64,000 nucleotides of DNA from Iphione sp. A-MEVVRFRX5 (taxonomy: Eukaryota), in NCBI GenBank assembly GCA_976226885.1, contig OZ320317.1, forward strand, positions 63,674,001 through 63,738,000, given 5' to 3'. Of this stretch, positions 2,420-26,029 are shown piece after piece. The notes below the pieces were generated by a model that worked only from the letters and a program-made list of their open reading frames with translations, did no database searches and was not told where the DNA came from. The first letter of the stretch is position 1, and the number at the start of each line of letters is the position of its first letter. The position numbers and the translations under genes were made by a program.

Positions 2420-3196
2420 ATGACCAGTACATCTGCATCTTATCTGGCCACGAGCATGGCGACAGGCAGACGCAGTTCCGACACTCTAGTCACCCTGTGT
2501 GCAAATCTTGTATTCCAGAATCAACCATGGCTTAGGTCTCTACCCCAATCAGACATAGATAGCTTGAATCGAGCCATGAGATTGATGGCGGTCCAAGCCA
2601 GAGCGAATGTGAGACTCGACTTCACAGAGCAATGTCTAGAGAACGGTTACCTCTTCAAGAGTACCGTCCACACAGGCACGGTACCAGGCTTCTATCGGGA
2701 CGATCCTGATCTGCAAAGTAATCTCAGTGAATTAAGACAGCAGAATGCAAGGAGTAAGATGCTAATGATGGTGGAATCCCTGAGAAAAATCAGCCAAAGA
2801 ACACGCTCTGAGGCATATTCAGAGATAGCGAAGGTTGAAGCTAAGATGACGAATCAACACATAGCAGACAGCTGGAGGTACACCCAAGAGTGCACTGACA
2901 AGGTGGACAGGGAAATGCATGACGATCTAGTGAACAGGCAAAATAATATAATCATGTCTAACCTATCCAGTTCCATTCTAGCCCCTTTTCACCAAGCGGC
3001 TCAGGGCCACACACGAGGCCCTACCCCACGATTGGGCCTGAAGGGAGCCGCCAACAAAAGGCCCATGTCAAGAACCGGCCAGACAAAACGATCAGCACCA
3101 GAATCATCAGCAGATCTACCAAAGGAAAAAAAGAAGACGATCAGGGTGAGCCAGGACGAAATGACTCTCCTGGAAAAAATACTACGAAAATCTTAG
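2420..3196 (+). CDS. N-terminal helical/coiled-coil region of the PLE polyprotein (258-aa ORF)
   Basis: Contains LDFTEQCLENGYLFK and a downstream amphipathic helical segment resembling N-termini of long PLE ORFs; lies inside the pseudo-LTRs directly upstream of the RT region. Confidence 0.6.
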   Translation: MTSTSASYLATSMATGRRSSDTLVTLCANLVFQNQPWLRSLPQSDIDSLNRAMRLMAVQARANVRLDFTEQCLENGYLFKSTVHTGTVPGFYRDDPDLQSNLSELRQQNARSKMLMMVESLRKISQRTRSEAYSEIAKVEAKMTNQHIADSWRYTQECTDKVDREMHDDLVNRQNNIIMSNLSSSILAPFHQAAQGHTRGPTPRLGLKGAANKRPMSRTGQTKRSAPESSADLPKEKKKTIRVSQDEMTLLEKILRKS

Positions 3197-3198
3197 TA

Positions 3199-5477
3199 AG
3201 TGACACCACCACCACCAAAAATAGGTTTGCGATACTATCAACCATGTCTGAAAATCCCAAGCCCACAAGTGAACCTCCCCCCAAAACCAATGAAAAAATG
3301 CAAAAAATTAATAACTGTAAGGCCAGACCAAAAGACAAACTTAAACCAAGCAAGATCCTAAGTGCTAGTCAATTCAAATCTAACGATATTCGCTTATAGT
3401 TCAGAAAAATTGATGAACGGGCGCCTCTGTCAAATGAGGCAGCACAAGGAACAAGTGATGCCCAGAATGCAGGTGCCACCAAAGGAAATGATCTTGACCA
3501 TACTACTGTTAACATAGACCTAAGAGTTCAAGCTAACCCCATCAAACGTTGCTTAATAAACATGTTCCATGAAAACCATGTGTGCCAAGACTATGACTGT
3601 CTCAAGAAAATTGAGCAAAGAATTGAAGAAATCGAAAATAAGCCCAAAAAGAAAGTATACAACATCTCACAATACGAATTAACTAATGCAGAGCTCAGCC
3701 TGCTTGAAAGAGGCCTTAGCTTCTGCCCCACCCCCGGCGAGATTAACCTAGGTGAGAAGAAAGAAGATATAGATAAATTCCATAACAAACTAAGATTCAG
3801 ACATCACTTTAAAGACCATTCAAACAATACACTTTCTGAATGTGAAAAAAACATACGAAAAATTGACAGAAAGAACAAACCAATGAGGAGGGGTCCATCT
3901 GTGCCTCCTCTACTGGAAACAATGATAAACATTAATGAATTACAATTGGACGACATCACCCCAAGAGACCCCGAGCACAAAATATCTCAAAAGAAGAGAA
4001 AAAGGCTATAAAGACATTGAGGAGTAACAGATCAATTATCATAAAGAAGGTGGACAAAGGAGGCGCAGTAGTGGTCATGGATAGAGATACATATCGCAAT
4101 GAGGCAGAAAGACAACTCTCTAACACCTCACACTACAAAAGATTGGATCACGACACTACTAATGAGTTTAATGCCTCCATAACGCAAATGATAAACAAAC
4201 TATGTGAAGATGGAGAAATCCCACCAGACACATCGAAAAAACTGATAACTGAAAAACCATGTACCCCTGAAATGTATTTCTTGCCAAAAATACACAAAAA
4301 TACATTCCCTCCATCGGGGAGACCAGTAATATCAGCAAATGGCTGCACCACAGAGAAAATATCAGCGTATGTAGATCATTATCTACAAACTGTAGCAAAA
4401 TGCCAACGATCCTATATCCGTGATACAACAGACTTTATAGATAAACTAAATAATCACACATCAAACAAAAAAGACCTCCTGGTCACGCTAGACGTAACCT
4501 CCCTTTACACCAACATCCCCAACATATCCGGGTTGACAGCCGTAGAAAGACAATTAAACAGATACCAAAACAACAAATCGGGTCCCAGCGATAAGACACC
4601 ACTGCAACTCTTGAAGGTGGTACTAGAAAAAAACAATTTTAAATTCAACGGCGAAAACTATTTACAGATTGGAGGTACTGCTATGGGCACAAGAGCAGCA
4701 CCATCATATGCAAATATCTTCATGGGCGACTTTGAGGAACGATATGTGTACATACAAGAACTACAACCAAGCCTCTATGTCAGATTCATCGATGACATTT
4801 TTCTAATATGGCCACATGGCATGAACAGTCTCAACAAATTCATCGAACGACTCCAAACCAGTGTAAAAGGTATCAACTTCACAGAATCCATTTCAGACAA
4901 AAAGGTCGTCTTTTTAGACTGTGAAGTCAAAATGGACCAAAAAGGAACCGTATCAACAAATTTATACATGAAGGACACAGATAGCAACACAATACTACAT
5001 TATCATTCAGCACATCCGAGGCAAATGAAAAAGAACATCCCCTATAGTCAGTTCCTACGCATCCGACGGATCTGCAGCAACGAAATGGACTTTGCCACAC
5101 ACTGCTTAGAGAAAGCCAGATCACTGGTAGAGCGCAAATACCCGCTACCAATAATTGCCAGAGCATTACATGAGGCCTCAAAGAAAACCCGCACAGAGAC
5201 ATTAACCTCAAGGAAAAGAAACGTAGAGGGAGACCAAAACATCCTAATCACTACCTACCATCCAGAGAACAATGAAACAGAAGAAATGGTAAGAAGAAAT
5301 TATGTCTTCTTACAACGATCTCAGTCCACCAAAGAACTGGGAGATTCAAAATTGCTCATAGCCTACCGTAGGTGCAAGAACCTAAGGGACACCCTAGTCA
5401 GAGCCAGGTTCCAAGACTATGAAGCAAAGAGTCATGGTGAACAACAGGAAAAGTTGATAACAGGTGTAGAGATGTGA
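3199..5477 (+). pseudogene. PLE reverse transcriptase region (disrupted)
   Basis: NISQYELTNAELSLLERGLSFCPTP, IIIKKVDKGGAVVVMD, YFLPKIHK, LDVTSLYTNIP, QIGGTAMGTRAAPSYANIFM, YVRFIDDIFLIW. In-frame TAG at 3397-99; frameshift near the A-run at ~3978-3981. Confidence 0.92.
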
Positions 5478-9176: not shown

Positions 9177-9780
9177 TATGCCTGCATATTGAGCTGTGGG
9201 TGCCTTCGAACAAAACAGTCAGACTTATTTTTGTTCTTTGAGGGAGGTCATTTTCAAAGAGATGCATTTGAGAAGATGTTACAATTATAGCAGGCACAAG
9301 AACACAGGTGTGACTTCAAATATATACCACGACACACCAGGTGGTAATGTTGATTTATCTGCTTACGTTGCAGTTGTACCTACTAAACAAGGCTAGAATG
9401 CATTGCAAATAACAGGATGTAACAGCAATAGTCAGAACAAGGCTAGAAAATGTTTGAACAGAACATGTTAAAGTCTGCTAAATTTGATGTTACCTTGTGC
9501 GTGCAAATTGTATGCCCATCTCCACACGTCATATATTTCTGCATATTTTGTTATGTTGTGATTTTTTTATGAGTTATTGACATTGTTGTGTACATTATTA
9601 TCAGTTATTTATGCTGTTTGCATTGGTTTGTGTTGCTTATCTATTTCCTGGTCACAAGAAATCAGATTTTCAGTATCTAGAACTTTCATATGAGCTATGA
9701 TTTTGTACTGCCAGCCTTGGTGAAGTTTGCTGTATCATTTTATATATCAAACTGAAGATGTTTAATTGTAGATTCTTCTG

Positions 9781-9801
9781 GGGCCAGCTGCTGTTATGCA
9801 C
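9781..9801 (+). repeat. Left TIR of the Harbinger
   Basis: Reverse complement of 19530-19550 with 2 mismatches. Confidence 0.93.
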
Positions 9802-9919
9802 ATCGCCACCGCGGGGTATTCGGCCGTGTTAGTGATGACCCAATTACTTTACCCCGTTGTAACCGCTACCCCGCTCTCCTTACCACGCTTTGAAAATCGC
9901 GCCTTGTTTCGTGATACGT

Positions 9920-10000
9920 GATTGGTTGCTCGCTAATTCCCGCGCGAAAAACTATATCCGCCATAAACAGACGCGCACGTGTACCTAGTAGTATATAAGT
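9920..10000 (+). promoter_or_regulatory. Probable promoter of the Myb/SANT gene
   Basis: GATTGG (inverted CCAAT) at ~9920 and TATATAAG at ~9991, about 110 bp upstream of the ATG at 10103. Confidence 0.4.
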
Positions 10001-10102
10001 AAGTGCTCTGAGCCGCTCGTCCACTCGTCTCTGAGCACGCCCACCAGCTACTCGTCAAGCTTTTTTTTTATCTCCGACATACGTGATACGCAACGTACCG
10101 AG

Positions 10103-13100
10103 ATGGGAAGGACACGGACCAAGGCCGCTAAATCATGCAAGAAGTCAAAGAAGCCTGCGACTACCTCAGACCCCAATTCTACGGAACCTGAGCGGGGTAC
10201 GAACTGGGCCATGGAAGACTTGGTAAAGGCTGTGCATTTGTTGTTCAAGTACGAGCTGAACAATGCTAAGGCCTTCGAAGGACCTGGAGCGAAAGCCCGC
10301 AAAGAGAAGGCATGGACAGAGATGATCGCGGAGTTCAATGAGTGAGTACTTCACGGAATTCCTTACTATCTATTTATAATTTATTACGTATTATGTATTA
10401 CGTGTGACGATTGTGGGCGGTATGAGGCACTTTAATAACGGATCTGTTTCAGAATGATTTTTTTTGTTGATGCTCGTATCACGTATTATGTATTACCTTT
10501 TATATGTTACGTAGTCTATGTTCGGATGAAAAGTTTTGCCTAAGCGTGAAGTATTCATGTATGTCAAAAATGTGCGATAATTTTTTTTGTGTGAATTTTC
10601 GTATCACGTATTGTGTATTATGTATTATGTATGCCGTATTATGTATCCCGTATTACGTCTTATGTATCACGTAATGAGGTTCTTGTATCGGTAAACTTTG
10701 TATTTTTTATTGTCTGTACAAGTTATTCGGTATTGGCTCCTATGCGCATATTTATTATATAGCATATTTGTGACTGCTCATTACGAAAGTAACGAAATTC
10801 GGTTAGAACCGTCCTAAGATAAGAGTCCATTTGCACGATCAACGGTCAGGGGCAATGTGTAGTGACCCCCTGGGGTTGGAATTAATTTTTCACTGGGGTC
10901 TGTTTCCTGCCTCGATCAACGGTCGGAGGCAATGTGTCCTGACCCCCTGGGGTTGGAATTAAGTTTTCAGTGTGGTCTGTGTCCTGCCATGATCAACGGT
11001 CGGAGGCAATGTGTCATGACCCCCTGGGGTTGGAATTAATTTTTCAGTGTGGTCTGTTTCCTGCCACGATCAACGGTCGGAGGCAATGTGTCGTGACCCC
11101 CTGGGGTAGGAATTAATTTTCCAGTGTGGTCTGTTTCCTGCCTCTATCATCGAAGTGTTACATTGCGCTTATACATGTTATACATATCACCCCACCACCA
11201 CAGGAAATTAAATGTATTTCCTTTCATTCTGTAGGATTGCCCTGGAACCCCACGATAAAGATGGCATCCTGGAACGGATGAAGGGAGTCCGTATCTGAGG
11301 TAACAGAAGTTTGCAACTTTTCCACTGTGATTAGTTACCGAATGCAATTCATTGATGTGATCCCACCCGATAATGTCTTTTGTCATCATTACAATGCCTA
11401 GTATGTCCACCCTATTTGTTCTCCCTAGATCGCGCCGCCAAAAACGCTATGTTGGCCACAGGCGGTGGGGGCCAAGTAAGAGTGGGAGAAGATGTGGATG
11501 TCTGGCGGCAATATGAACCCGATCATGCCATGCCATTCCAGGGTCCAGGCGCCCCCGATTGCAGTAAGTAGTGAGTGCAGTCTCTTCAAAAATGATTGTA
11601 ACATTCCTCACTGATTTGTACCTCCAAGACCCCCGCTCATCGTATGTATTGTCTGATTCCAGTCGGTGAACGTAGCCCACAGTCTCAGGCCCTCGCCAAC
11701 CGTAACTGCCCCACGCCTCCTGATGCAGATGTGTGGGCATCCGTAGACGACGAAGAGGAGGAAAACGTGGACGACGAGGCAGTGCAATGGACCCAAGGAG
11801 AGGGTTTTGCTACAAGCACACCTGCCACAGATGCTGCTCGTAAGCCGCCAGCCAGGTGCAACGGTGGCAACAACAACAGAGGGGCGAGCTCGTCGTTACT
11901 TGCCGCCCTCAATAGAAGCTCCGCTCCTGAAGCCGCATCTACTTCCTTCGGTGGGTCCTCCCAAGACACACAAGACATGTCTGCGATTGGACCGTCACCT
12001 CAGGTAGCAGTGCCTGTTATGGTGTACCAACCCCCTGCCAGCGGCACGTACACCAACTTGCAGAGTGTGGCCCGCAACGGGGTTCCTACGGAAGCTTCAC
12101 AGGAAATGAGCTTCATGTACACACAGATGCCCAGCCAGCCTCCTTATGTGAGCCAGACCATGAGTCAGATCGACCCTGAGAGCCAGAACACGAGCCAGGG
12201 TCCGAGCATGAGTCAAGGCCACACTCAGAGCATGAGCCAGGGTCTTAGCATGAGCCAAGGCCACACTCAGAGCCTGAGCCAAGGTCCGAGCATGAGTCAA
12301 GGCCGCACTCAGAGCATGAGCCAGGGTCTTAGCATGAGCCAAGGCCGCACTCAGAGCATGAGCCAAGGACAGAGCAGCAGTCAAGCTTGCATACAGAGCA
12401 TGAGCCAGTGTCCGGTCGCCAGTTTAGGCCACAGTCAGAGCACAAGCCAAGGTCCCAGCACGAGCCAGCCCCAAAGCATGAGTCAGAGTCAAAGCCAGAG
12501 CATACTGGGTTGCTCCAACGGTACCGTCCAAGGCACCTCTGCCACAGTCCAGGCGAAGACGAAGAAAGGCACGAGCAACAGGACCACCATCGCCAGTACA
12601 CTGGTGTCAAGTAGCTCCCAGCCACCCTCAAAGAAACCACGACTGAGTAAGTGGACGAATAAGTTATAGGCCTCAGTAAATGACGTACCTGCGAGCTGTT
12701 TTGTTTCTTTGAATAACGACATTTACCTATACGTACAATTTGCAATAAACCATCTGAGTAACCACTAGCAATTGTTCTTTTTTCAACAGAGCGAGCGGAG
12801 AAGGGGGTGCAGACGAGAGAAGAACTACTGGCCAGAGAAATTGATAGCGCCACTGCGAAGATGGATGCAATGGATAAGGACGACGAGCGGAGGGAGAAGA
12901 TAGCGGACAAGCGCCTCCGTCTAGCCGAGAAGGAAAGCAAACTGAAGGACGCCGCGCTTACATCCGCTGACAAGAGGGAGAAGCTGGCTGACTATCAGTT
13001 GGACAGAGAACAGGCCAGAGAGGCCAGAGAAGTAATTGAAAGTGGCCTGCGCTGCATGGAAGGTTCGAGGGCTGGCCGTGCAAGCCGAGGCCATAACATA

Positions 13101-13457
13101 CGAAATCCGGGCTGTGTCCGACGCCGCTGCACATGCCTCCACTCACAAAAGTAAACAGGTGCGTATTTGTTCAATTAGCATGTTTAATAGCTCCACACCC
13201 AAAGAAAAAAAAATACGTGATACGGAATTGTTACGTGATACATGCAAATTATGATTAAATGATTTTAACGTAATATCGAGTCGGATATTTTTTTATTAAG
13301 TGTTCATCGCCTTGAATTGCAGAGCATTGCGACGCAAACTGTGGAGGACGGTGTCCGATTCGACAGGCAAATGAAACGGCTAAGGAAACTACACCGCTGC
13401 ATGACCGAGGATGGACAACATTTCAGCAGCGACGACGAGGGCGAAAGCACATCGTGA
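10103..13457 (+). CDS. Harbinger Myb/SANT-like DNA-binding protein, 6 exons (10103-10341, 11235-11299, 11429-11563, 11663-12646, 12790-13158, 13323-13457), ~641 aa; in-frame TGA at 11296-98 and one inferred extra base in exon 5
   Basis: RGTNWAMEDL...KEKAWTEMIAEFNE...ILERMKGVRI*DRAAKNAMLATGGG is a trihelix-type Myb/SANT pattern followed by TGGG. All introns are GT-AG with matching phases; C-terminal coiled coil; AATAAA at ~13576. Confidence 0.85.
10834..11143. repeat. Minisatellite, 4 x 77 bp, in intron 1 of the Myb/SANT gene
   Basis: GATCAACGGTC recurs at 10837, 10914, 10991 and 11068; there are no unique spacers. Confidence 0.95.
12130..12500 (+). repeat. Coding tandem repeat (SQG-x-SM-SQG-x-TQSM, ~14 aa / 42 bp) in Myb exon 4
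   Basis: SQGPSMSQGHTQSMSQGLSMSQGHTQSLSQGPSMSQGRTQSMSQGLSMSQGRTQSMSQG in ORF 11644-12669. Confidence 0.9.
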
Positions 13458-13967
13458 AAATATGCAAAAACAGCTGTAAAATTTGTCCTGAGTTGGTAAA
13501 AGTCTGCATGCAAGAAAACGATATCTGTAGCGGTCAATACCGTCTGCCCTTGTTGCTGTTTGACTTGTTTTTTGAATAAAGTCTTTATCATATACTCGAC
13601 TCTTTATCAGCCAGTCACTGTAGATAAGGGGGAGAGACTGAAGATGTATTCCGTCGGGGAGTAAGAGGGAGGGGGTTTGTGGTTTGTGGTTTCAGGAGGG
13701 CTACATGCGTCTTGAATATGCGGGTTTGTGGTTTCAAGAAGATACTGCCTGGGAAACCGCAGACAGGCGCCTAACCGCATGGACCGCGACATGATTGGGT
13801 AGTTAAGGTCGCTAGGCAACGGTGCGCTATGGATTGCCATGCGGTGGGGTGATCGACGCGCTTCATTGGTGCGCACCCCCTTACAATAGGAAACTTCGCC
13901 GCCAGCTCAGACACCTGTTATCCAGCCAAGAGTGAAGACACTAACTTCTAGGCACTTATCCAGCGAC

Positions 13968-16900
13968 ATGGGGTCAGTGTTTTGCAAGCTTATTTACGTC
14001 AATTTACATCTCTTTCATTAGGATGGATACCTTCTACACCCGCAAGATGAATGAAGGATCGACTGTAATATTATATTTGCTAATTTCAGACGCAAGAATC
14101 TCGGCCCGAGAGCCCCTAGGACAGCTGGAGCTTTGGCCACCTACCGCTACCGCGAGCGTGAGAAGGCCAAGGGACCAGAATTCCTGGAAAGCGAGCGTCG
14201 GCAGGTAGCGGCTATCCGTAAGTGTGCAATGAATTTTAAGTAACTGATGTGTGCTTCATGTGTTATGACCACCGGTGGGTGGCAGTAATTTTGCGCGTCT
14301 TTCCTCTGACACATTATGTTAGGTGGCCAGTACAGGCCAGGTGTGTGTTCCTACATATGTTAGGTGGCCAGTACAGGCCAGGTGTGTGTTCCTACATATG
14401 TTAGGTGGCCAGTACAGGCCAGGTGTGTGCTTCTCCATATGTTAGGTGGCCAGTACAGGCCAGGTGTGTGTTCCTACATATGTTAGGTGGCCAGTACAGG
14501 CCAGGTGTGTGTTCCTACATATGTTAGGTGGCCAGTACAGGCCAGGTGTGTGTTCCTACATATGTTAGGTGGCCAGTACAGGCCAGGTGTGTGTTCCTAC
14601 ATATGTTAGGTGGCCAGTACAGGCCAGGTGTGTGATCCTACATATGTTAGGTGGCCAGTACAGGCCAGGTGTGTGATCCCACATATGTTAGGTGGCCAGT
14701 ACAGGCCAGGTGTGTGATCCCACATATGTTAGGTGGCCAGTACAGGCCAGGTGTGTGATCCTCCATATCTAAGGCCGTGCCTCCTTAGGTTAGGTCGTCT
14801 TATATGGCAATATGCCACGGTTACTGTTTTAGGGCGGCGGCAAGTGATCCCCTCGGACGATTCCGAGGCCACAGAGCTGTACTCACTCTCCGAGCAAGGC
14901 TCTCCCCCACACGACGAGCCCCCCCAAGAAGAACCGGTCGGTCCTGAACAAGAGGAGGACGACGAACGGGAAAGGTCCGCGTCCGAGGTTGAAGAGGACC
15001 AAGAGGAGGACGACGAACGGCAAAGTTCCGTGTCTGAGGCTGAACAGGAAGATGCGGCCCAGGAACCACCAGCCGGCCCTGCTGACCAGCCAGACGGCGA
15101 AGACGCCCACCGTCTCCAACCGCTGGCGATGTTGCGGCTCCCATTGAGGCAACCACTCGAGGCGCCCCCACAGCCGGTAGTAGAAATTGATGTCGCTGAG
15201 GGACCTGCCCTCGACCACAGACAGCCCGAGGAGGAGGAGGCGCCCCCAGAACCGGAAGTCCAGGAGGACCTCGCTGAGGGACCAGCAGCCCTCGACCACA
15301 GACAGCCCGAGGAGGAGGAGGCGCCCCCAGAACCGGAAGTCCAGGAGGACCTCGCCGAGGGACCAGCAGCCCTCGACCACAGACAGCCCGAGGAGGAGGA
15401 GGCGCCCCCGGAACCGGAAGTCCAGGAGGACGTCACCGAGGGACCAGCCCTCTTCTGGGCTGAGCGAGTGGAGCCACTGCGAGCTGGTGTCAAGGTGGCT
15501 CTCAAGAGTAAGGACGTCTAACTTCTTACAGTATTTAAATATCAGTGTTGTTTTTAACTTCACATATTGCGATCAATTCCTGTCTTGGTAATGGTGTGGA
15601 CTGCCATTTGTGTAACATGTATCATGTAATCGCGTATCTTGTATCACATATGCTGTAATACCGTATTGCGTAACACATAACTTTTTTGGGTTGCCTAATT
15701 TAAAGTTCCTACTTTATATTTGTAGCAAACGCAGGCGTCTGGTACGGCAGCGCGCTGGTCGCCATGAAACGACGGGGCGACACCACAGTCGCCAAGGACG
15801 AGGAGAGGCTGGTCACCTCGATCCAAATTCTGGACGGGTGGAGTGCTCCCATAACCGAGGCTGTCCAGCTGTGGTCGCTGGAGAGCAATGAGGAGGAGGC
15901 GCGCTACCATGCAAGGACGACCGCTCAGCCAGGTAATAGGCTCACCATCCGAGACCCCCACACCTGTACAGCGCACCAGCCACCGTACTGCATCGATCTG
16001 ACCGACGACGCAGAGGCACCACACGACCAGGCAGACGACAGAGGACAACAGGCGCCACACGACCTGACAGACGCCCGGACACAACAGACGGCACACGACC
16101 TGACAGATGACCAGGCACAACAGACAGCACACGACCTGACAGATGACAGAGGACAACGAGCACCACACGACCTGACAGACGACCGCACACAACAGACAGC
16201 ACACGACCTGACAGACGACAGAGGACAACGAGCACCACACGACCTGACAGACGACCGCACACAACAGACAGCACACAACCTGACAGACGACCAGGCACAA
16301 CAGGTACCACACACACACACACACGAGCAGACACAACAGACAACACACACACACACAGACGACCAGACACGTCCGACGCCACAGACACACACAGACGAGC
16401 AGACACGACAGACGCCACAGGCAGAAGGGGACTTCTGTTTCATCCAGGCTCTCAACACGCCGGATACACCCGGATGGAGATTAAGAGGCGCCGAGCAGCC
16501 GGTGACATCACGAGCCGGAGGCAAGAAGAAGAAGGGGAAGGGCATAACAACACCGTCGGCCCCCGCCCCCCCCCCCCCCGAAAACAGCACGGAAGCGGTC
16601 GGCACCCCGGCAAAAGAAGCCCTCCAAAAGGCAACGCCTGCTGGCAGCCAGTGAGCAGGCATTGGCAGCGTGGGGAGAGAACCCCGTCACTGCGGTGCAG
16701 GAGTTGGGTTGGGAGGACATTGCCCCACCAGCTCCCACTTCTCCCCTGCCCCTGCCTGCGGAAACCCAGCCCACTTCACCTGACCCTCCCACGACCACAC
16801 CGCCGCGTAACCCAAGGCCTCCACCTCCCTCAACCAGGATCAGCCAAGAAGGCCCGCGATCGCGATTCCAGGCGGTGGACCCTGCATCACCGGCTGCCGA

Positions 16901-17030
16901 GCAGGCGATAAAGCTCGAGGTGGAGCGACTGATGGCCAGAGGCGGTCAGGTCAACGAGGAGGACTTTGTGCAGCTCATGGCTGCCATGGAGCAAGTCCGT
17001 CCGTCAGGACGGCACATGCACGTGCCTTGA
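13968..17030 (+). CDS. Third Harbinger gene of unknown function, 4 exons (13968-13972, 14090-14217, 14833-15507, 15726-17030), ~703 aa after removing one extra C in the poly-C run at ~16561-16579
   Basis: All junctions are GT-AG with consistent phases (2,1,1). Product: MGRKNLGPRAPRTAGALATYRYREREKAKGPEFLESERRQ..., acidic repeats, PLRAGVKVALKTNAGVWYGSALV..., xDLTDD repeats, KKKKGKG, KKPSKRQRL, Pro-rich segment, C-terminal helix. Confidence 0.8.
14314..14765. repeat. Minisatellite, 11 x 41 bp, in intron 2 of the third gene
   Basis: Unit ATATGTTAGGTGGCCAGTACAGGCCAGGTGTGTGTTCCTAC, head-to-tail, with variation confined to the last ~7 nt. Confidence 0.96.
15195..15450 (+). repeat. Coding repeat, 3 x 81 bp (EGPAALDHRQPEEEEAPPEPEVQEDLA)
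   Basis: Visible in ORF 14733-15521; near-identical DNA units. Confidence 0.93.
15990..16420 (+). repeat. Coding repeat, ~11 x 36 bp (HDLTDD-xxQ-xxx)
   Basis: CIDLTDDAEAP followed by HDLTDARTQQTA / HDLTDDRGQRAP-type 12-aa units that degenerate to HTHTDD at the 3' end. Confidence 0.93.
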
Positions 17031-17471
17031 TGAACTTGTTTGCAATTCAGTGAACATTCCAATATTTTATTGCAGGGGCCATTATCAAACCTTATTTTCA
17101 CATGTATCATGTTTATTTCCTATTTTATTTAAAAATTGAAAAAAAAATTGAAATCCTGCCTACGTAATCACGTAAAACTTTTATTTCATTTTAGCATACA
17201 GATACTTCGAATAAAGGATACAGATAACGGTTCAATCGTGAGTTTTTATATCTACTTGCTTGATGACACATACAAACACTTTTGAAAACCATTTACAGTG
17301 CGGGTCCTGCATAAGATGACACAAACAGACCGGATGATGGACCAGTTAGGACACTACGTGCCTGAGACAGGTAGCAGCGATGAGTGTTCGGAAGGCATCA
17401 GTGACAGCCCGAGGACAATCCAGGAAACACCCCCAATGGAACTTGAAGGGTGAGGAAGGGGTGAGGTGGAT

Positions 17472-19285
17472 TTAGCTGAAGTACTGGTTAATGATCTGTT
17501 GGCGAAAGACTGCCCCATTAACAGCCACATCGTCGTTGTTAAGCTCGGGCGGGGGGGGATTTCTTCCGGGTCATGTAGATAGATATCTCTGAGGGGTCTG
17601 ATCGCTTCGAGAATCTCATCACGCTGGCGGACACCCAAGTTGTGCAGAATCGCTGCAGCCTTAATCATTGTTGCACATCGGGTTGGTCTGAAGTTCATCC
17701 TCTTGGACAACATGCCGAAACGTCGTTTCAGAACGCCAAAGGTTTGTTCTATTAGAACTCGGGTGTGGGTATGGGCATCCTGGTACCTGTCCTCAGACTC
17801 GTTCAGTACTTGGTTCTTGCGGAATGGCGTCAAGCACCTCCTTAGGCAGGCGTATCCACTGTCGCCCAGGAGGTGGCTGGGGCCGCGCATGGGCTCAAGA
17901 TAACGTTGGAAAACTTTGCTTTGTCGGAATATCCGAGCATCATGAACACTACCAGGCCAGCAAGCTACAATGTCTCTAATACGTTGCTTGTGGTCGCAAA
18001 CAGCCTACAAAAGAAAATTTCACATGTGTTAACCATCGGCGGTGTCCTTGGGTATGCGAGCAATGAAAACATGTCACAATTTAATGATTTCAGCAGGACT
18101 TTTTTAAGGCTATATTAGATCACCTAATTATTCTAACAATCACATCATTTACCTGTATGTTCAACGAGTATTCAGTCTTCCTGTCAACATATTCCGGGTG
18201 TCTAGTGGGAGGGCGAATGATGAGGACATGAGTACAGTCAATGCATCCGATGACAAAAGGAAACCCAGCCATTTTGCGAAATTCCCTCATTATACCATGT
18301 CGCTCCTCTTGTCCCGGCAGATAAAGGAACTCAGCATGCATGGTGTCGACAATGGCCAGAGCAACCCGGTGGACGGTACGACATATGGTGGGCCCCGATA
18401 CCTTGATGATGTCTGCAACAACATCCTGTATGCTACCTGTACAAACACAACACATTAGACGCCTTATTAGACTGAACGGACCCGCATCGGCAGTGCTAGA
18501 ACAACAGATATGGCATGACATGAGCAGAAGAAAACGGAACATTCAAATTGAGGATTCATGAAATAAAATACGAAAGAAAAATTTAGTTGTCTGTTACTAT
18601 GTAAGGAAATGTGGATAGGTGAGGACATGTACACAAACACCAATTAACAGTAACCTTAACGCCGAAAGAATTACGTGAAGCAAAAGAAAATGATCTTACG
18701 TCATACGTGATACCAAAATATTACACATGAACCAGTATAACATGAAATCAGTATATAACTATTGCAATCAACGCAATGTACAGATTGACATGGTTTGGAA
18801 AATACCTAATACGTAATACATCTTACATGATACGTGATACGTGATACATGTTACGTGATACGAAAAGTTCAAAAAAAAAAATTCCTACCTGTAGCAAGAT
18901 AACGCAGGAAGAGCACGGCTTGTATCAGAGGGGGGAGCGCAGGGCCTCTTTTACGTCTTTGCTCCAAACGACCTTTCACATAGTCAACCAGTATGTAGAT
19001 ATTATGACTGTAGAAACGATATTTTCGACAGATCTCCTTTTCCTTTAGAGTCTCTAATGGATTGAAAGGGTCAACCAACCTACGAGCTACAAATTCCTGA
19101 CCGTAATGTCGACGAGCATGATGGACCTCGCGGAATTCCACAGGTTCATCTTCCAAAACAAAATCCTCCTCATCCACTTCGTCTGCGTCAAGGTTCTCCA
19201 CAGCATCGTGGAATACTCCTTCCTCCTCTTCTGACAAAATTTCTTCCAAAAGATCACGTTCTTCGCCCAAATTATTCGTCGCCAT
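17472..19285 (-). CDS. Harbinger/PIF DDE transposase, 3 exons (19285-18889, 18436-18153, 18004-17472), ~404 aa; one base missing in the G8 run at 17551-58
   Basis: KYRF, LRYLATG, GFPFVIGCIDCTH, YVDRKTEYSLNIQAVCD, WPGSVHDARIF, LLGDSGY, RVLIEQTFGVLKRRF, AAILHN; the restored frame ends GAVFRQQIINQYFS*, a typical Harbinger C-terminus. Confidence 0.95.
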
Positions 19286-19529
19286 GATGTTTCTCCCTCG
19301 ACCTCTCCCGCCAAAGTGGTAAACTTACCCTGCCTCCTATAGGGGTGGTAGGAAAAGTGGGTCAGAGCTGTCAAAACACCCCTTTCCAGCAGGGTAAACA
19401 CGTTACAGCAAGCGGCACCCCCTCTGAGCGGGTTAACGACGGGTTAAACGCCGTGGTAAAGGGTTACAGCAAGCGACACTAATTTTCGCGCGTGGTAGTC
19501 GGCCAGGGTAATTTTAATGAGGGTGGTAA

Positions 19530-19550
19530 GTGCATTACAGCAGCCGGCCC
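19530..19550 (-). repeat. Right TIR of the Harbinger
   Basis: Reverse complement of 9781-9801 with 2 mismatches. Confidence 0.93.
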
Positions 19551-22500
19551 CAGTTATAATACCATTTGATTTTATTGCTTATCATAGCAATGACACAAAG
19601 ATAAATAATATGTATGATAAACTTTAAATTTCGATAGGTTCCCATGATTTCCAATAAAACAACAATAAATATTTACTCTAAAAAGCAATACCTAATTACA
19701 AAAGTGTTCAGGATGTGATTTGCCATGTTCATGCATAAAGGAAAGATTGATTTTTTTTATTACAGATACAGATTGTCTGATAAACGTATGAAAAATATTT
19801 TACAATATAGTTGATCAGTTATAATGTGTGCTTTTGCTAGCTAATTTGGTATGAGCTAAAACTGCCTGAAATCCCCTAGGGTTATGTTGCCAATTTCCAC
19901 GGGAAAAATAACTTCATAAATATATTAGTAAAAATATAAAGTAGCAGGCTAGATGACTACATTTTAATACATGAAACACAGACTTAATTGTTTTAAATTT
20001 CACATTTCTAGGAAGGCAAGACGACCACCATCCACATATGGATGACTTAGCACTCTACCAAGATAAAAGGGTTATGCATTTCATCTGCATTGCATTAAAT
20101 TTGCAGCATATGTTTTTTAAAAGATTTGTTTCATGTATTGTGTGTATGCATTGCATGTACACTGGGTATGCATTGGGTGTGTACTTTCTTGCAGTTATAT
20201 GAAAAGGACATGAAACAGGAGCCTAGACCTAGGCTTAGGATATGGGATCCATGTATGAAATCTACTCAGTTGCATTTTACTAGTGTATAAGCTGTAGCGT
20301 TGCAAAAATATTAAATATTTGTGGAAACAATGCACATTTGGCCCATATGTAAGAGATTTGAGCAAAGTCAGGGTATTTGTGGACAAAAAAGAGATAATAC
20401 ACAATACAAATAAAAGCAAAAGGACACTCTCATGCATTCCCATGTATTGTCACAGTCATAGATTGTGCAATGAAAACATAAAAAAATGCAAAAAATACAA
20501 GTATGGGACAACTTTTCGAAAAAGGAATCAATTCTGTTAACCTTTTGGACCGTCCCAAAAAGGAAACCTGCTTGTAAATATTGTTGACGAGATGAGTTAC
20601 TAGAAAAGTATTGATAGAAATATCTCAAAATTAAGATTATCCTTCCCTTTCCCTGTAGACTTTACCATACATGTACGTTACTCCAGAGGGATCTAGTAAT
20701 ACTTCTTGCATGTTTGTGAGAGAAGTTGTATGTCAGTCTACAGCTCCCACAGTAAGCACGAATTTCCACGGGAGCAGCACAGCTTAAATTGTCACGTACA
20801 CATTATCCCATCAACACACGAACTACTACTTTCAATGATCCCTTTAGCTACAGTCCACAGGTTCTCTGATGTGTGCTTGCATGCACGAGCCCGTTTTCGA
20901 TCTTGCCCGCAGGGCGTTTCGTTTGGTTGTACGGAATACGTACGCACATACGGAAAGCTGTCAATACGTATTATGTATTCATTTTATGCGTACATGATGC
21001 CCCTTGAAAAGCTTCGGTTACTTGGATTAAAATGATATATCGCTGAGTCATCATGATTTGCTTCGCTACGTGATTGAATTTTCGTGAATCCAACCAAATC
21101 TATATGTTTCAGCTTATTTCAAATGTACCTCTCGCCATATTGTATCATGTACCAGTATATGCGTGATGTATCTGCCACTGAACTTCCTACTTATTTATCT
21201 TCACTGTGTTTGTTGTATAACATCCCAACACAACGAATTTGAAAATTTATTTTGGATTTTTTGCTCCCAACGTTTCGTACACAATAGTGTCCTCGTCATC
21301 TCATAATTTATAATCAATACATGTAGTATCTTCACTGCTGTACATACAGGTGGAGGGTAGGATAGGAAACGAGGTGGCCATCATAAAAAAAAACACGGTT
21401 TAGAGACACTAACGGGAAAAATTTGTTATAAATGATTACATAGCCCAATGCTAATCAGTATATGCCTAATATAATAAAAGGAATATATCTGTTTTTCTCA
21501 TAACGGGCTGAAAAAATTTAATGTTGGTATGTAGATAGTCTTTTTTTCCTTTTAATCCAGAAGCATTTGTGTACAAATTCTTCCACTGGTTGCATCTAAA
21601 TGAAGATCATAGTATAGCTAGGGTCCTACGAAAGACATTCTTTCTGAAGTTATGCAGAAAAAGAGATATTCTATTAGGACAAAAAGGAGGGTTGGTACGG
21701 TTACTGGAAACATTTTTTTTATTTAGACCTTAGTTATTTCTTGCCCGAAAGAAACAGAGAAAAAAAGGCTAAAGATATCCAAAGCGGTTGGAATGCATTG
21801 TAAATATTTTCATTGGAAAGAAGTAGCCAAATGCGCATCAAAACTTAACTGATAGAGTGAAAAATTAAACAAAGGATATGATGCGATTTTTGCCATGTAC
21901 TCTGAGCTTTCCAGCTAAGAGATAGCCGGGTGTGCATGTAACGGGCCTGGACCAGTATTTATACCTGTGCTTCACACATGCGTGTTCAAATGGCATATTG
22001 ATATTGTGATACTAAAAAGAACACCTGACAAGATTTATGAGGGTAATAGTGGCCACCCTTTAGCTTGATAACGTCATCCAAGTCGCAAATGTAAGGGTAT
22101 AGACTCCGAGCATGGCTTGTCACGATAAAGACATTTTCCTGTAGTCGTTTATTGAAAATAGATCTCCGAGATCCTTCTAGATGGAGGAGGAATGTTTCTC
22201 CGAAATCCTGCTACATTGAGGTTCTCTTTAACAAGGAATAAAGATACATAGAACATGTATGATGATTGCAGAAGTATGATTAGAGCTACATCATGGACAT
22301 TCTATTGTACAACAATTTTGAAAATGTCGAGATGATGTATCAGTTAATCATGACATGATCTGCTGCATACACTGATTTGTCTTATGAAGTCAGTATCTTT
22401 CGTCACACTAGGATTAGTTAGAACTTCAGATTTGCTAATTATGCTAATTATCTACTTATCGAAGTCCTCCCTCTGTAACCAAGCGCAGCAGGATACTTTT

Positions 22501-24189
22501 TCTTGATGCTCAATAATATCATGGCCTTTCCTTGAGGTATTGTCTTCTGCAGGACATTCTCCATTGAGTCGGTATTTTATTTACCCCTGTACTAATTTGA
22601 TCATTCAGGTAAGACAGGAGACTACTTATAACGTAAACTGAGGTAAAAGAGGTAATATCATCATTCCCAACAAGCAGAATTAGATACGTTTTGTGAGGAA
22701 AATGCAACCGAACGGCCTTAATCAACAGATAACGGCATTTAAAGCATTCTGCCATTACTCATAAATTTATCTTCGAAGCATAACACGTGTGTGGACAGTC
22801 TGAACAAAACCACAAGAATGCCTAGTAAAATAAACATCACCCTTTCTACATCGTACTCGACTAAATTCGTCAATATCCTTCCACTTTTGCTAATTTTCAT
22901 CTACTACTGTGTTTATATTTGCTTACAGTGTGTGCGCTTATCCCAGCTTCAAACATAATCATGATAGGTATTGAAAGTAGAAATTGAGCAACCAGAAAAA
23001 ACAGGGCAAGCGTTAGGTCGATTTACACAGTAGCATCTGTGTTGTTTATCCTCTAGTACGTGGGAATCATACTCTCAATGATCCAAGATAAATTTAGAGC
23101 ATTTTGAAAGACCGATACAAATTCTAAATAGTTCACTTAGTTTCAGAATTAAAAATGTAATTATACCTCTATTATCGGAAAGTTAGGGACTGCGCACTAG
23201 CATCATACGAAGATACAGGTAGAGAGGGGCACCAAAGATGCACGTCGAGATTCAGGGCATCCGATAAAGATATGTGCAGAATGATCATCAGCTAAAGCCC
23301 TGGTGCAGAGAGAAGGTTTCAGATGGGGTCAACTGGAAAAGCGTGGCATGCGATATGGGAACTACATGATTGCTTGACAGGCTTTACGGGGAATACTAAC
23401 AGAGTAAGATCTCAGCTTGTATGGGAGAGATCATTTGACAGACATGTTACCAGATATTACAGCTGGCTCCACTTAATCATGTCCCAGTTAACCGAATCTC
23501 CCATTTATATGAACCATTGTCTGCCTCAAATGTGGGTTTTCCCCTATTTCGTGTTTTAATTAATCAAACCCTGGTTTACTGAACATCTTGGCAAGACCAA
23601 TTCCTGATTTGTAGGTAATAACGAAGAATCATGATTATTGGTTTGGTTAAGCGGACGGATTGTAAGTAATAAGTATATTGATATGGATTACGGTCGGGAT
23701 AAAGATGAACAGAAGTGCTGAGGAAAGATGCTAGTTTTTAGGTCATGGCAATATGTTACAGGGAGAGGATTCAAAGTACGGCTCGGCTGTTGAAGGATTC
23801 TATTGAGAGTGAAAAAAATTGAAGAGGTACATAGTTGTTTTAACGGGCGCGTAGTTACCTTTGTACATTCTCTCAATCTCCAGGTCTTGGGGAGGGCATA
23901 GTGCCACAAGCGGTCCTGCTTGCTGGGTACACGCTCTGTCAGCATCATCAGACTTATATAGGGCTCTTAAAATGATGATGAACCGTGGAGAAAGGTAGCT
24001 ATTACAAGTGTAGTATGCATGTATGCACTTTCTCCGTCCAGGAATTCGACAAATGCCGCGTGGGCGATATACAACCAAACTACACGTTAATTAACGTACA
24101 GATTTCCATTAGCAAATCACGATGGCAATTCAGATGAATGGTTATTGATGTTATAAATCTATTTCTGTGTCCTCATATTCTAATTAAAT

Positions 24190-24960
24190 GGGTTGACGTC
24201 ACGGCTTTAAGAATCACTTAGTTCTGCCTTCCACTCTGTCCTCTCCTCTCCAACAACATACCTATATTTCATCGCCCCCTCACCTTTTTAGCTACTTTTA
24301 ACACCGCAGACTGTGTTAGTCTCCCCCGCCCCCTGGTCCTGCTTTTCTTTGTATCTTTCAGTACAGGTCAAGACTTTATATTTATGTGTCGTAAATTTTG
24401 TGTTCGGACCGAACTTGCCTTTGAAAGCAGTAATTCGACCCCTCTCATCAACAGATCCTTACAAAAAAAACCAAGCCAGCCGCACAACTCCTCTCCAGCG
24501 ATGTCTCTTCCACGGTCAACACTCGTACCCGAGAACGCGTTGGTGTGACGTCACGGCGAACTTTAGCCAATCATTAGCTCCTCCCGTTGATCGCGGAGGA
24601 AGCGGCGTGGACGCTCGACGCCGCCAGCCTGACGCGTAGTGAGAAACGTTTGAACTAGTCCCCACAACCTTTCCACAGGCTAGGTGGGTGGCCGGATGTG
24701 TTGTGGGAATTGAGGGAGGGCGCTGCGGTGGGTAAGGTGAAAGCTACTTTGGGGGTGGAGAGTAAGATGCATTAAAGGTAGGTGGATATGTGTGTGTGTG
24801 GTGGGGGGTGCTGGTCGAGTGGGACGGTCCTACTTATCGAAGAGACGCCGCACTGCCCGGGATTGGACGCGCGAGAGGTATTCGAGGGAGGGGGGGGGGG
24901 GGCGGGGGAAGGAAGGAGGGGGACGAGAGTCGCGCGCGGGGGCGAGCGGCAAGTTGAAAT
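24190..24960 (+). promoter_or_regulatory. CpG-rich promoter region of a host gene
   Basis: TGACGTCA at 24194 and 24546, CCAAT at ~24567, ATTGG at ~24862, dense CpG and a G-rich tract at 24885-24922, upstream of the signal-peptide exon. Confidence 0.55.
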
Positions 24961-25947
24961 ATACGCGCACCGTTAGCGGACGACGCGGCGGCGGAGGCAA
25001 CACAGACTGAGAGGGATAGAGAGCACAAGCAACTCGCAGAAAGAGAGGGGCAGTGAGAAATACGACGGGATCCACTCAGTGAACGGGAGATAGGGAGCGG
25101 CCTTTGCTACGACGGCCTGCAGACCCACTACCACCACCTACGCTACCACCTCCATCATCAACACCAATTCACTACAACCCATCAGCACCTACCACCATCA
25201 CCACCTCCTAGTTCATTCTCATCCGTGTTGTTCAAGTGGATCAAGCAAACGCACAGATAGACAGACAGTGGATAGACAGGAGGGACAGACAGGAAGACAC
25301 AGCAGATACTTGATAGGAGAGGCCCGTAAGAAAGTGTGGTCCAAGGGGCATAAAGACCTGAGCGAGAACTGCACAAGGTAAAGTTGAATTTGTAGAAGAG
25401 AGAATAAGCTCATACACGGGTGAAAACGTTTCCAGTGAAGTCCGACTTTGGATTTGATTGTCATTGGCACTAATTTACTCAGTTGGAAAACGGGGTGAAA
25501 GAAGGAACTTACTTGATAGGATAACAAAGAAATTAAGAACCTTTCCGTTTGGGTCGATGGTTTGAACACCTGTAGACCACTGAGCAATAATTTCACCAGA
25601 GACCGGAAAAAACAGTTCACAGCAAAGAGTAGAGATAGACACCGAAGGGAGGGGAAAAGCGTAGATCTTACACCAAGGTCAAACCAAACTTTAAAGTCAT
25701 AAAGGATCAAGCACAGGGAGTGTGGCAGGGGTGATTAACAACATCAGAAACTACCAGGAGTGGGTGTACCACCCTGACTCTTCCGCCCACTCACGCCCCA
25801 GCTCCCTCTTGCCTAACTGCATACCTACCAACTACCCACGCCTACTCCTTCGACCCACCAATCCACCCGCCCACCTTTGGGCGGCCGCTCCCGCTGCCGG
25901 TGACACACCTGCTCGCTCCAGCTCCTCCAGTAACTCCGAGCTGCTCC

Positions 25948-26029
25948 ATGGATAGGTCGGGCTGCTGGGGCTTTCTCCTCCTCCTGTGCCTCGTCTACCT
26001 CTGGCTCGGCGAGCGACACTCCGTCTCAG
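25948..26029 (+). CDS. First coding exon of a host secreted or membrane protein (signal peptide), followed by a phase-1 intron
   Basis: GCTCC ATG G context; MDRSGCWGFLLLLCLVYLWLGERHSVS(G); donor CAG|GTACGT. Identity cannot be determined from this exon. Confidence 0.72.

What the first reader, a model, noticed from the sequence alone, without database searches (positions are those of the whole stretch)
9781..19550. Three-gene Harbinger transposon: transposase, Myb/SANT and an unexplained cargo gene
Seen: one TIR-bounded 9.77-kb unit holds two + strand spliced genes and a convergent - strand transposase, each with phase-consistent GT-AG introns. Known: canonical PIF/Harbinger elements encode two proteins, and extra ORFs are reported only for some lineages. 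Inference: this family carries a dedicated third accessory protein, possibly forming a three-component mobilisation or anti-silencing system. The intact DDE motifs and TIRs suggest recent activity.
Basis: partly seen in the sequence, partly recalled or inferred. Interest (0 to 1): 0.9.

Follow-up and report, generated by a model that had tools for sequence, protein, structure and literature searches.

The report
Harbinger transposon with extra orphan gene
This is a real PIF/Harbinger DNA transposon that carries, between its two usual genes, an extra intron-containing gene-like unit with no relatives anywhere; the only retrievable relative lacks it, and all three genes in this copy have reading-frame breaks, so a working three-protein system is not shown.

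Summary
The unit is real. 24-bp terminal inverted repeats match at 22 of 24 positions, at 9778-9801 and 19530-19553. They bound a HARBI1-like DDE transposase (minus strand, 3 exons) and a convergent partner gene (plus strand, 5-6 exons) that is probably Myb/SANT-like.

A 4.3-kb insert lies between their 3' ends and holds a third gene-like unit (13968-17030). Evidence that it codes:
- It has three strong GT-AG introns.
- Exons are GC-rich and introns AT-rich.
- The proposed frame gives the best codon-usage score of six frames in 6 of 7 segments.
- Tandem arrays in exons have periods divisible by three.

It has no termini of its own. Its predicted product is a very acidic, mostly disordered orphan. 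Its two 3' coding pieces found no relative in collections drawn from about 15 billion proteins. No coding piece matched Pfam.

- The only retrievable relative (transposase 60-68% identical) has the partner gene abutting the transposase, with no third gene.
- There is no target-site duplication.
- All three genes carry apparent frame breaks: a G8 run in the transposase, a C14 run in the third gene, and near 13040-13057 in the partner gene.

Other copies in the source genome could not be examined. Unchecked first-stage notes list other Harbingers with extra genes elsewhere in this genome.

The parts
9778..9801 (+). Left terminal inverted repeat, 24 bp
   Evidence: Matches the reverse complement of 19530-19553 at 22 of 24 positions. 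GC and CpG composition step up here.
19530..19553 (-). Right terminal inverted repeat, 24 bp
   Evidence: It is the outermost of three TIR-like direct repeats at 19393-19419, 19454-19480 and 19525-19551.
10103..13457 (+). Partner gene, probably Myb/SANT-like. Exons: 10103-10341, 11235-11290, 11429-11563, 11663-12646, 12790-13154 (592 aa as read). The likely ancestral 3' end continues in the +1 frame over 13036-13158, followed by a last exon at 13323-13457.
   Evidence: In-frame translation. Exon 1's nearest atlas clusters are PF13873 Myb_DNA-bind_5 (score 0.89). Exons 4 and 5 are homologous to the convergent gene of L001/L002. Similarity of the C-terminal frame and of the last exon to L002: z = 4.7, and 2 of 500 shuffles reached the score. 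AATAAA at 13575.
13968..17030 (+). Third gene-like unit. Exons: 13968-13972, 14090-14217, 14833-15507, 15726-16654 (578 aa up to the TGA at 16652-16654). Coding-like sequence continues in the +1 frame to 17030, giving about 703 aa if read across the C14 run at 16566-16579.
   Evidence: Donors are GTCAGT, GTAAGT and GTAAGG, each intron ends in a pyrimidine-rich AG acceptor, and phases are consistent. Exon GC is 0.61-0.66, against 0.34-0.35 in two introns and 0.50 in the intron that holds the 41-bp array. GC is 0.64 as far as 17030 and 0.33 beyond. The proposed frame is the best of six in 6 of 7 non-repeat segments. Exonic arrays have periods of 51, 81 and 36 bp.
14315..14768 (.). 41-bp tandem array, 11 copies, 97% matches, inside intron 2 of the third gene
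   Evidence: The period is not a multiple of three, unlike all the exonic arrays.
17354..19285 (-). HARBI1-like DDE transposase. Exons: 19285-18889, 18436-18153, 18004-17354 (443 aa as read). The conserved C-terminal motif ending in QYFS plus stop lies in another frame at 17570-17472, just after the G8 run at 17551-17558.
   Evidence: DDE_Tnp_4 at E = 2.5e-15. 459 homologues; the best named ones are mollusc 'putative nuclease HARBI1' at 45-49% identity. Alignment and frame analysis.
10372..10689 (+). Degenerate heptamer array (GTATCAC/GTATTAT type, containing the 9-mer ACGTGATAC on the opposite strand) in partner-gene intron 1
15601..15690 (+). The same heptamer array type, inside intron 3 of the third gene
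   Evidence: Five GTA[AT][CT]A[CT] hits in one 150-bp bin, against 0.15 expected. Only four such bins exist in the 64 kb, and all are in introns of this element. A 13-bp exact match links it to the array in transposase intron 1.
18688..18862 (-). The same heptamer array in transposase intron 1

Best explanation
This is a PIF/Harbinger cut-and-paste DNA transposon with the canonical convergent gene pair: a HARBI1-like DDE transposase and a DNA-binding partner, probably of the Myb_DNA-bind_5 type. In this lineage it has gained a 4.3-kb segment in the spacer between the two 3' ends.

The segment carries a lineage-specific, intron-containing passenger gene. Its predicted product has a basic N-terminus and a strongly acidic body grown by in-frame tandem-repeat expansion. 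A basic, NLS-like patch follows, and the C-terminus has a few helices. Most of it is predicted to be disordered.

Shown here:
- The anatomy of the element.
- The coding-like statistics of the third unit.
- The absence of termini of its own.
- The absence of homologues.
- Its absence from the one available relative.

Inferred:
- The gain was secondary.
- The protein is not part of the transposition reaction. Established work on PIF/Pong and Harbinger3_DR shows that reaction needs only the transposase and the Myb-like protein.
- The gene hitch-hikes, or at most modulates the element's expression or chromatin.
- This particular copy is decaying, or its assembly has homopolymer errors, because all three genes show frame breaks.
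For: - TIRs match at 22 of 24 positions.
- DDE_Tnp_4 match and alignment with the catalytic D, D and E.
- The partner gene is homologous to the convergent gene in L001/L002 and has PF13873-like embedding neighbours.
- Coding signals in the third unit: strong splice sites with consistent phase; exon/intron GC contrast; proposed frame best of six in 6 of 7 segments, even ignoring stops and training on the transposase alone; exonic tandem periods of 42, 51, 81 and 36 are all multiples of three, while intronic periods of 7, 77 and 41 are not.
- The element-specific heptamer array also occurs in intron 3 of the third gene.
- No flanking inverted or direct repeats beyond chance.
- In the relative, transposase and partner gene abut.
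- No homologues or domains.
- No paralogy to the other two genes.
- Composition is 62% E/A/P/D/Q/T with net charge about -68.
- Literature states that two proteins suffice (PMC2836001 abstract; PMC13668399).
Against: - No second copy of this family could be examined, so whether the gene is a constant part of the family is unknown.
- No expression data are available.
- The repeat-rich region is open in several frames on both strands, so ORF length alone means little.
- The first coding exon is only 5 nt.
- Language-model 'recognition' of two third-gene pieces (2107 and 2130) is below the 2300 that most real families reach.
- The relative is known only from contigs of 1.0-2.9 kb, so a third gene elsewhere in that element cannot be excluded.
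Confidence: 0.5

Rival explanations
1. The segment is not a gene. It is a GC-rich spacer laden with minisatellites, and its open frames and splice-like sites are fortuitous.
For: - Long ORFs occur in several frames on both strands across 14.7-16.9 kb.
- About a third of the putative coding sequence is tandem repeat.
- No homologue or domain was found.
- Atlas recognition is low.
- AlphaFold2 gives no confident fold.
- The frame is broken at 16652.
Against: - Three strong GT-AG introns sit exactly at the GC transitions, with consistent phases.
- Codon usage favours the proposed frame in 6 of 7 independent non-repeat segments.
- All exonic arrays have periods that are multiples of three, and none of the intronic arrays do.
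Confidence: 0.2
2. It is a true third component. The acidic nuclear protein is encoded by all autonomous copies of the family. It takes part in mobilisation or protects the element from silencing.
For: - The unit lies inside the TIRs and has no termini of its own.
- It shares the element-specific intronic heptamer array.
- It has an NLS-like basic patch and coding-like statistics.
- First-stage notes list other Harbingers with extra genes in this genome (unchecked).
Against: - The closest retrievable relative lacks it.
- Canonical Harbingers transpose with two proteins (PMC2836001).
- No recognisable functional domain was found.
- The gene is frame-broken in this copy.
- Nothing links it to silencing.
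Confidence: 0.12
3. It is a transduplicated host gene, or part of one, captured at the DNA level with its introns, as in Pack-type elements or C. elegans Turmoil-1.
For: - Capture by a PIF/Harbinger element has an animal precedent (PMC2572040).
- The unit has its own CpG-rich upstream region and an AATAAA at 17210.
- It is unrelated to the two transposon genes.
Against: - The pieces searched found no homologue of a parent gene. The 308-aa exon-4 piece was scored against 1.84 billion representatives of about 15 billion proteins and hit only low-complexity repeats. The C-terminal piece was blank.
- The intronic heptamer array is shared with the other two genes.
Confidence: 0.12
4. It is a nested insertion of a different mobile element that brought its own gene.
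For: - The segment is absent from the relative.
- Its GC content is higher than the rest of the element.
Against: - No inverted or direct terminal repeats bound 13.04-13.42 kb and 17.03-17.50 kb beyond shuffle expectation (scores 20-22, against a null mean of 19-20 and a maximum of 29-30).
- No transposase, reverse transcriptase or other mobile-element domain was found in it.
Confidence: 0.05

Closest known systems
Canonical animal PIF/Harbinger elements (for example Harbinger3_DR, Harbinger-1M_cIno, and mollusc 'HARBI1-like' copies)
   Same: - DDE_Tnp_4 transposase with conserved D, D and E.
- A second gene for a DNA-binding partner.
- Short TIRs with subterminal repeats.
- Genes carrying introns.
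   Different: - At 9.78 kb it is unusually large.
- A 4.3-kb segment with a third gene-like unit lies between the two genes.
- This copy has no TWA target-site duplication.
- The transposase has a 60-aa acidic N-terminal extension.
The related element on ENA contigs L001/L002 (transposase exons 60-68% identical)
   Same: - Same transposase lineage.
- Same convergent partner gene, with a coiled-coil exon 48% identical and an acidic last exon.
   Different: - In the relative the partner gene's coiled-coil exon overlaps the transposase 3' end.
- Its last exon lies antisense inside transposase intron 1.
- It has no third gene and no ACGTGATAC arrays.
Turmoil-1 of C. elegans, a PIF/Harbinger element with transduplicated host coding sequence (PMC2572040)
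   Same: An animal Harbinger-superfamily element that carries coding sequence beyond its own genes.
   Different: - In Turmoil-1 the captured pieces are fragments of identifiable host genes (rsp-2, cpg-3) and sit in the terminal repeats.
- Here the extra unit is a complete multi-exon gene-like unit with no identifiable parent, and it sits between the two genes.
Spy elements (PIF-related, no TSD). Recalled from memory: Han et al. 2014, Genome Biol Evol.
   Same: A PIF-like transposase and no target-site duplication.
   Different: Spy elements insert between AAA and TTT. The flanks here are ...ATTCTT and TTATAA..., so that defining target is not met.

Membership tests
PIF/Harbinger superfamily | DDE_Tnp_4 (HARBI1-like) transposase with a catalytic D-D-E triad | tested here: met
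   Pfam PF13359 at E = 2.5e-15. 459 homologues found. D, D and E align with 12 homologues. The conserved C-terminal motif is out of frame in this copy.
PIF/Harbinger superfamily | A second element-encoded Myb/SANT-like or MADF DNA-binding protein | tested here: inconclusive
   Atlas neighbours are PF13873, score 0.89 with 171 shared features. Pfam on exon pieces was blank and the sequence search was blank. The domain is split over three exons and could not be submitted as one protein. The gene is homologous to the relative's convergent gene.
PIF/Harbinger superfamily | Short terminal inverted repeats | tested here: met
   22 of 24 positions match, at 9778-9801 and 19530-19553.
PIF/Harbinger superfamily | 3-bp target-site duplication, consensus TWA | tested here: not met
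   The flanks are CTT and TTA, or TCT and AGT if the TIR is taken to start at GGGG. Consensus as given in PMC13668399. One copy only, so post-insertion mutation cannot be excluded.
Spy group | Insertion between AAA and TTT without a TSD | tested here: not met
   The flanks are not AAA|TTT.
Transduplicating (Pack-type) DNA transposon | The captured segment has an identifiable host parent gene | tested here: not met
   Only low-complexity repeat matches among 1.84 billion representatives. The C-terminal piece was blank. The source genome itself could not be searched.
Tudor/SH3-like reader domain (claimed for the third protein in a sister note) | Profile match or a confident beta-barrel fold | tested here: inconclusive
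   No Pfam match to either half. AlphaFold2 on the exon-4 part alone gave pLDDT 43. The candidate module is split by intron 3, and the spliced protein could not be handed to the tools.

The most novel reading that the evidence does not exclude
A Harbinger family in this animal lineage (probably a mollusc or close to molluscs) has evolved a genuine third gene. The gene encodes a nuclear, highly acidic, repeat-expanding protein. It is kept in all autonomous copies and acts with the transposase and the Myb-like protein, for example as a chromatin or anti-silencing factor. Together with the unchecked first-stage notes of other multi-gene Harbingers in the same genome, this would make Harbingers in this lineage gene-accumulating elements.
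Probability: 0.12. Interest if true: 0.7.

Novelty: new variant of a known kind. Interest (0 to 1): 0.35.

Why it matters
PIF/Harbinger elements are the textbook two-protein DNA transposons. Both of their proteins have repeatedly been co-domesticated by hosts, for example HARBI1/NAIF1, ALP1/ALP2 and HDP1/HDP2. A family that stably carries a third protein would raise two questions. One is what else a cut-and-paste element can need or exploit. The other is how new genes arise inside transposons, here apparently by in-frame minisatellite expansion.

As it stands, the evidence shows one decaying or mis-assembled copy with an orphan passenger gene that its nearest relative lacks. That is a modest curiosity until other copies and transcripts are examined.

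Tried and rejected
1. Other copies. None were found in the window (blastn). Exact look-ups of ten ORF products were blank. Metagenome scans with the transposase and with the TIR pattern were blank. The scan index by sequence was blank.
2. Homologues of the third gene.
   - A full HMMER scan of 1.84 billion representatives gave only repeat-region hits at residues 97-226.
   - The C-terminal piece was blank.
   - Pfam was blank even at E up to 10.
   - ESM Atlas was blank.
3. Nested insertion. No terminal inverted or direct repeats were found beyond the shuffle null.
4. Paralogy of the third protein to the other two genes. None was found.
5. One transcription unit with the partner gene. Splice phases from partner-gene donors into third-gene acceptors run into stops (read from the sequence).
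6. Rescuing the third gene's frame with an intron. The only GT..AG of the right length (16554-16587) is 34 nt, far shorter than the 99-893 nt introns of this element. It was rejected in favour of a break at the C14 run.
7. Mollusc relatives L003 (Haliotis) and L004 (Mya). The transposase was found, but no partner-gene or third-gene homologue within 10 kb. These were uninformative.
8. Extending the relative's contigs by exact look-up gave nothing longer.
9. Rfam and tRNA scans of the element found nothing.
10. Literature searches found no three-ORF Harbinger. Repbase and Dfam could not be queried.
The split Myb domain and the split barrel-like module were therefore never tested as whole units.


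Full report
**1. What is at the coordinates**

The window has no N and no case masking. At 9778-9801 the sequence CTGGGGCCAGCTGCTGTTATGCAC appears. At 19530-19553 its near-perfect reverse complement appears. They match at 22 of 24 positions.

Exact-seed repeat finding missed this pair, because the longest exact run is only 8 nt. For a slightly weaker match (20 of 22), my own estimate of the chance of one between two 1-kb end regions is about 1e-4.

Composition changes at the boundaries:
- GC rises from 0.40 to 0.51.
- CpG observed/expected is 0.80 inside the element, against 0.47 and 0.68 in the flanks.

The right end carries three spaced TIR-like repeats. The first 230 bp of the two ends share further motifs.

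There is no target-site duplication. The flanking triplets are CTT and TTA, or TCT and AGT if the repeat is taken to begin at GGGG. The family consensus is TWA (PMC13668399).

**2. The transposase**

Three minus-strand exons (19285-18889, 18436-18153, 18004-17354) join in phase through the intron boundaries GTAGGA...CAG and GTAAAT...TAG. They give 443 aa.

Support for the assignment:
- Pfam DDE_Tnp_4 matches at E = 2.5e-15.
- A search with exon 3 found 459 relatives.
- The best named relatives are 'putative nuclease HARBI1' of bivalves and gastropods, at 45-49% identity.
- One unnamed ENA protein is 64% identical.
- Aligned with 12 homologues, the exon joints are gap-free.
- The CIDCTH, SVHDAR, LLGDSGY and IEQTFG motifs, which contain the catalytic D, D and E, are all present.

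The same alignment shows a problem. Homologues end in a conserved G..(V/I)R..I...YF(S) motif followed by a stop. In the window, that motif (...FRQQIINQYFS, then a stop) lies in a different frame at 17570-17472. It comes immediately after a G8 run (C8 on the coding strand) at 17551-17558. As assembled, the ORF misses the motif and runs on for about 70 unrelated residues.

**3. The partner gene**

Five plus-strand exons (10103-10341, 11235-11290, 11429-11563, 11663-12646, 12790-13154) join in phase to give 592 aa. One donor, GTATCT, is weak.

What the product looks like:
- Exon 1's nearest ESM Atlas clusters are all Myb/SANT-like, led by PF13873 Myb_DNA-bind_5 at score 0.89 with 171 shared features.
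- Pfam on the separate exon pieces was blank.
- A sequence search was blank.
- The rest of the product is an S/Q-rich repeat region followed by a coiled coil.

Comparison with the relative (section 5) suggests a different true 3' end:
- The +1 frame of 13036-13158 resembles the relative's C-terminal part (z = 4.7; no shuffle in 300 reached the score).
- That frame ends at a CAG|GTGCGT donor.
- The donor is phase-compatible with an acceptor-bounded exon at 13323-13457.
- The product of that exon resembles the relative's last exon (2 of 500 shuffles reached the score).
- An AATAAA follows at 13575.

If this is correct, this copy has a frame break near 13040-13057. I put that at about 70%.

**4. 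The third unit**

A 4.3-kb segment lies between the partner gene and the transposase 3' end. A four-exon model reads in phase to a TGA at 16652-16654 and gives 578 aa. The exons are 13968-13972, 14090-14217, 14833-15507 and 15726-16654.

Evidence that it is, or was, coding:
- The donors are GTCAGT, GTAAGT and GTAAGG. The acceptors follow pyrimidine-rich tracts.
- Exon GC is 0.61-0.66. Two introns have GC 0.34-0.35, and the intron holding the 41-bp array has 0.50. The other two genes show the same exon/intron contrast.
- A codon-usage score ranks the proposed frame first of six in 6 of 7 non-repeat segments. The score was trained only on the transposase and ignored stop codons. By chance that result is expected about 1.5e-4 of the time.
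- Every tandem array inside a predicted exon of the element has a period divisible by three (42, 51, 81, 36). Every intronic array does not (7, 77, 41).

Reasons for caution:
- The repeat-rich stretch is open in several frames on both strands, so ORF length alone is not evidence.
- The first coding exon contributes only 5 nt.

Beyond the TGA, sequence with exon-like GC (0.64) continues to 17030, and GC then drops to 0.33. In that stretch the +1 frame is open and has the best codon score. The frames meet at a C14 run at 16566-16579. The ancestral product was therefore probably about 703 aa, and this copy or its assembly is shifted there. A 34-nt GT..AG 'intron' could also fix the frame, but it is implausibly short.

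**5. The only retrievable relative lacks the third unit**

The 64%-identical protein lies on two short ENA metagenome contigs, L001 (2858 bp) and L002 (2550 bp). By tblastn, transposase exons 2 and 3 are 60-68% identical to the window's.

Immediately downstream, on the opposite strand, lies the homologue of the partner gene's coiled-coil exon (48% identity). Next comes the homologue of its exon 4. In L002 the partner-gene ORF ends at 1442 and the transposase ORF ends at 1483, so the two 3' ends overlap.

In L002 a GTAGGT donor then leads, in phase, to an acceptor-bounded acidic exon. That exon lies antisense inside transposase intron 1.

No piece of the third protein matches these contigs. In this relative there is simply no room between the two genes for a third gene. 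Because canonical Harbingers have two genes, a gain in the window's lineage is the parsimonious reading. The contigs are partial, however, so a third gene elsewhere in that element cannot be excluded.

**6. What the third unit is not**

- **Not a bounded nested element.** Alignments of 13040-13420 against 17030-17500, in both orientations, score within the shuffle null.
- **Not a duplicate of the other two genes**.
- **Not a recognisable captured host gene.**
  - The 308-aa exon-4 piece, scored by HMMER against 1.84 billion representatives of about 15 billion proteins, matched only through its xDLTDD repeats.
  - The 122-aa C-terminal piece found nothing.
  - Pfam and the Atlas were blank.
- **No Rfam family or tRNA**.

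One feature ties it to the element. The heptamer family GTA[AT][CT]A[CT] clusters in only four 150-bp bins of the whole 64 kb. The 9-mer ACGTGATAC occurs 10 times exactly, always inside the element, against 0.3 expected. The four bins are two in partner-gene intron 1, one in third-gene intron 3 and one in transposase intron 1. A 13-bp exact match links the last two.

**7. The predicted protein**

- Residues 1-50 are basic (net charge +9).
- Residues 51-260 are strongly acidic (net charge -60).
- A stretch of about 85 residues of mixed composition spans intron 3.
- An acidic 12-residue repeat array follows (net charge -20).
- After that come a KKKK / KRxxxxRQKKPSKRQR patch, a proline-rich stretch and two or three helices.

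Overall, 62% of residues are E, A, P, D, Q or T. AlphaFold2 without an alignment gives only isolated helices for the C-terminal 148 aa (pLDDT 65, pTM 0.23). It gives no confident fold for the exon-4 start (pLDDT 43). The Tudor/SH3-like idea from a sister note therefore remains untested, because the candidate module is split by an intron and spliced sequences could not be submitted.

**8. Reading**

The best explanation (confidence 0.5) is a canonical two-protein Harbinger that has picked up an orphan passenger gene in the spacer between its convergent genes. That gene has since grown by in-frame minisatellite expansion. This copy is decaying, or carries homopolymer assembly errors.

The transposition chemistry itself should follow the known two-protein mechanism, in which the Myb-like protein recruits the DDE transposase to the ends. 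This rests on established work summarised in the PMC2836001 abstract and was not tested here.

Rivals:
- A non-coding repeat-rich spacer (0.2).
- A genuine third component (0.12).
- A transduplicated orphan host gene (0.12). Turmoil-1 is an animal precedent (PMC2572040).
- A nested mobile element (0.05).

**9. Novelty and context**

Full-text searches found no description of a three-gene Harbinger. Repbase and Dfam could not be consulted.

First-stage notes of this scan list several other Harbingers with 'extra genes' or interleaved genes on other pieces of the same genome. These notes are unchecked. The interleaved layout is, however, what I see in L002.

The finding is a new variant of a known kind if the gene is real. 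Its importance depends on genome-wide copy analysis, which the tools here could not do.

Noticed in passing
window 10081-10672, 13215-13241, 15601-15690, 18698-18861: The 9-mer ACGTGATAC occurs 10 times exactly, always inside the element, against 0.3 expected. Its degenerate heptamer arrays sit in one intron of each of the three genes, each time in the sense orientation of that gene. A small antisense cluster lies just after the partner gene's coiled-coil exon. The related element L001/L002 has no such arrays. They could be binding sites for the partner protein, but this was not tested.
   Followed up: partly
L002:60-290 (minus strand) and L002:1442-1939: In the related ENA element, the partner gene's last (acidic) exon lies antisense inside transposase intron 1. 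The partner transcript would therefore run antisense through transposase exons 2 and 3. The two ORFs also overlap at their 3' ends. In the window the equivalent exon (13323-13457) is not interleaved.
   Followed up: partly
window 16566-16579 and 17551-17558: Two of the three apparent frame breaks coincide with long C/G homopolymer runs (C14 and G8). This could reflect homopolymer length errors in the assembly and not real mutations.
   Followed up: no
window 2420-5477: Three consecutive plus-strand ORFs (258, 149 and 486 aa). The last one matches reverse transcriptase RVT_1 (E = 7.8e-7, just below Pfam's cut-off). The stretch is A-rich (AT skew about 0.3). It is probably a non-LTR or Penelope-like retroelement upstream of the Harbinger.
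   Followed up: partly
window 10834-11149 and 14315-14768: Two young tandem arrays lie in introns: 77 bp x 4 (91% matches) in partner-gene intron 1, and 41 bp x 11 (97% matches) in third-gene intron 2. The element seems prone to minisatellite expansion in both introns and exons.
   Followed up: no
window 24001-26000: A second GC-rich block (GC 0.51, against about 0.39 around it) with a 163-aa minus-strand ORF at 25219-25710 that has no Pfam match. It may be another mobile element or an exon cluster.
   Followed up: no
window 19285-19100 (minus strand): The transposase carries a 60-residue, strongly acidic N-terminal extension that is absent from all 12 aligned homologues.
   Followed up: no
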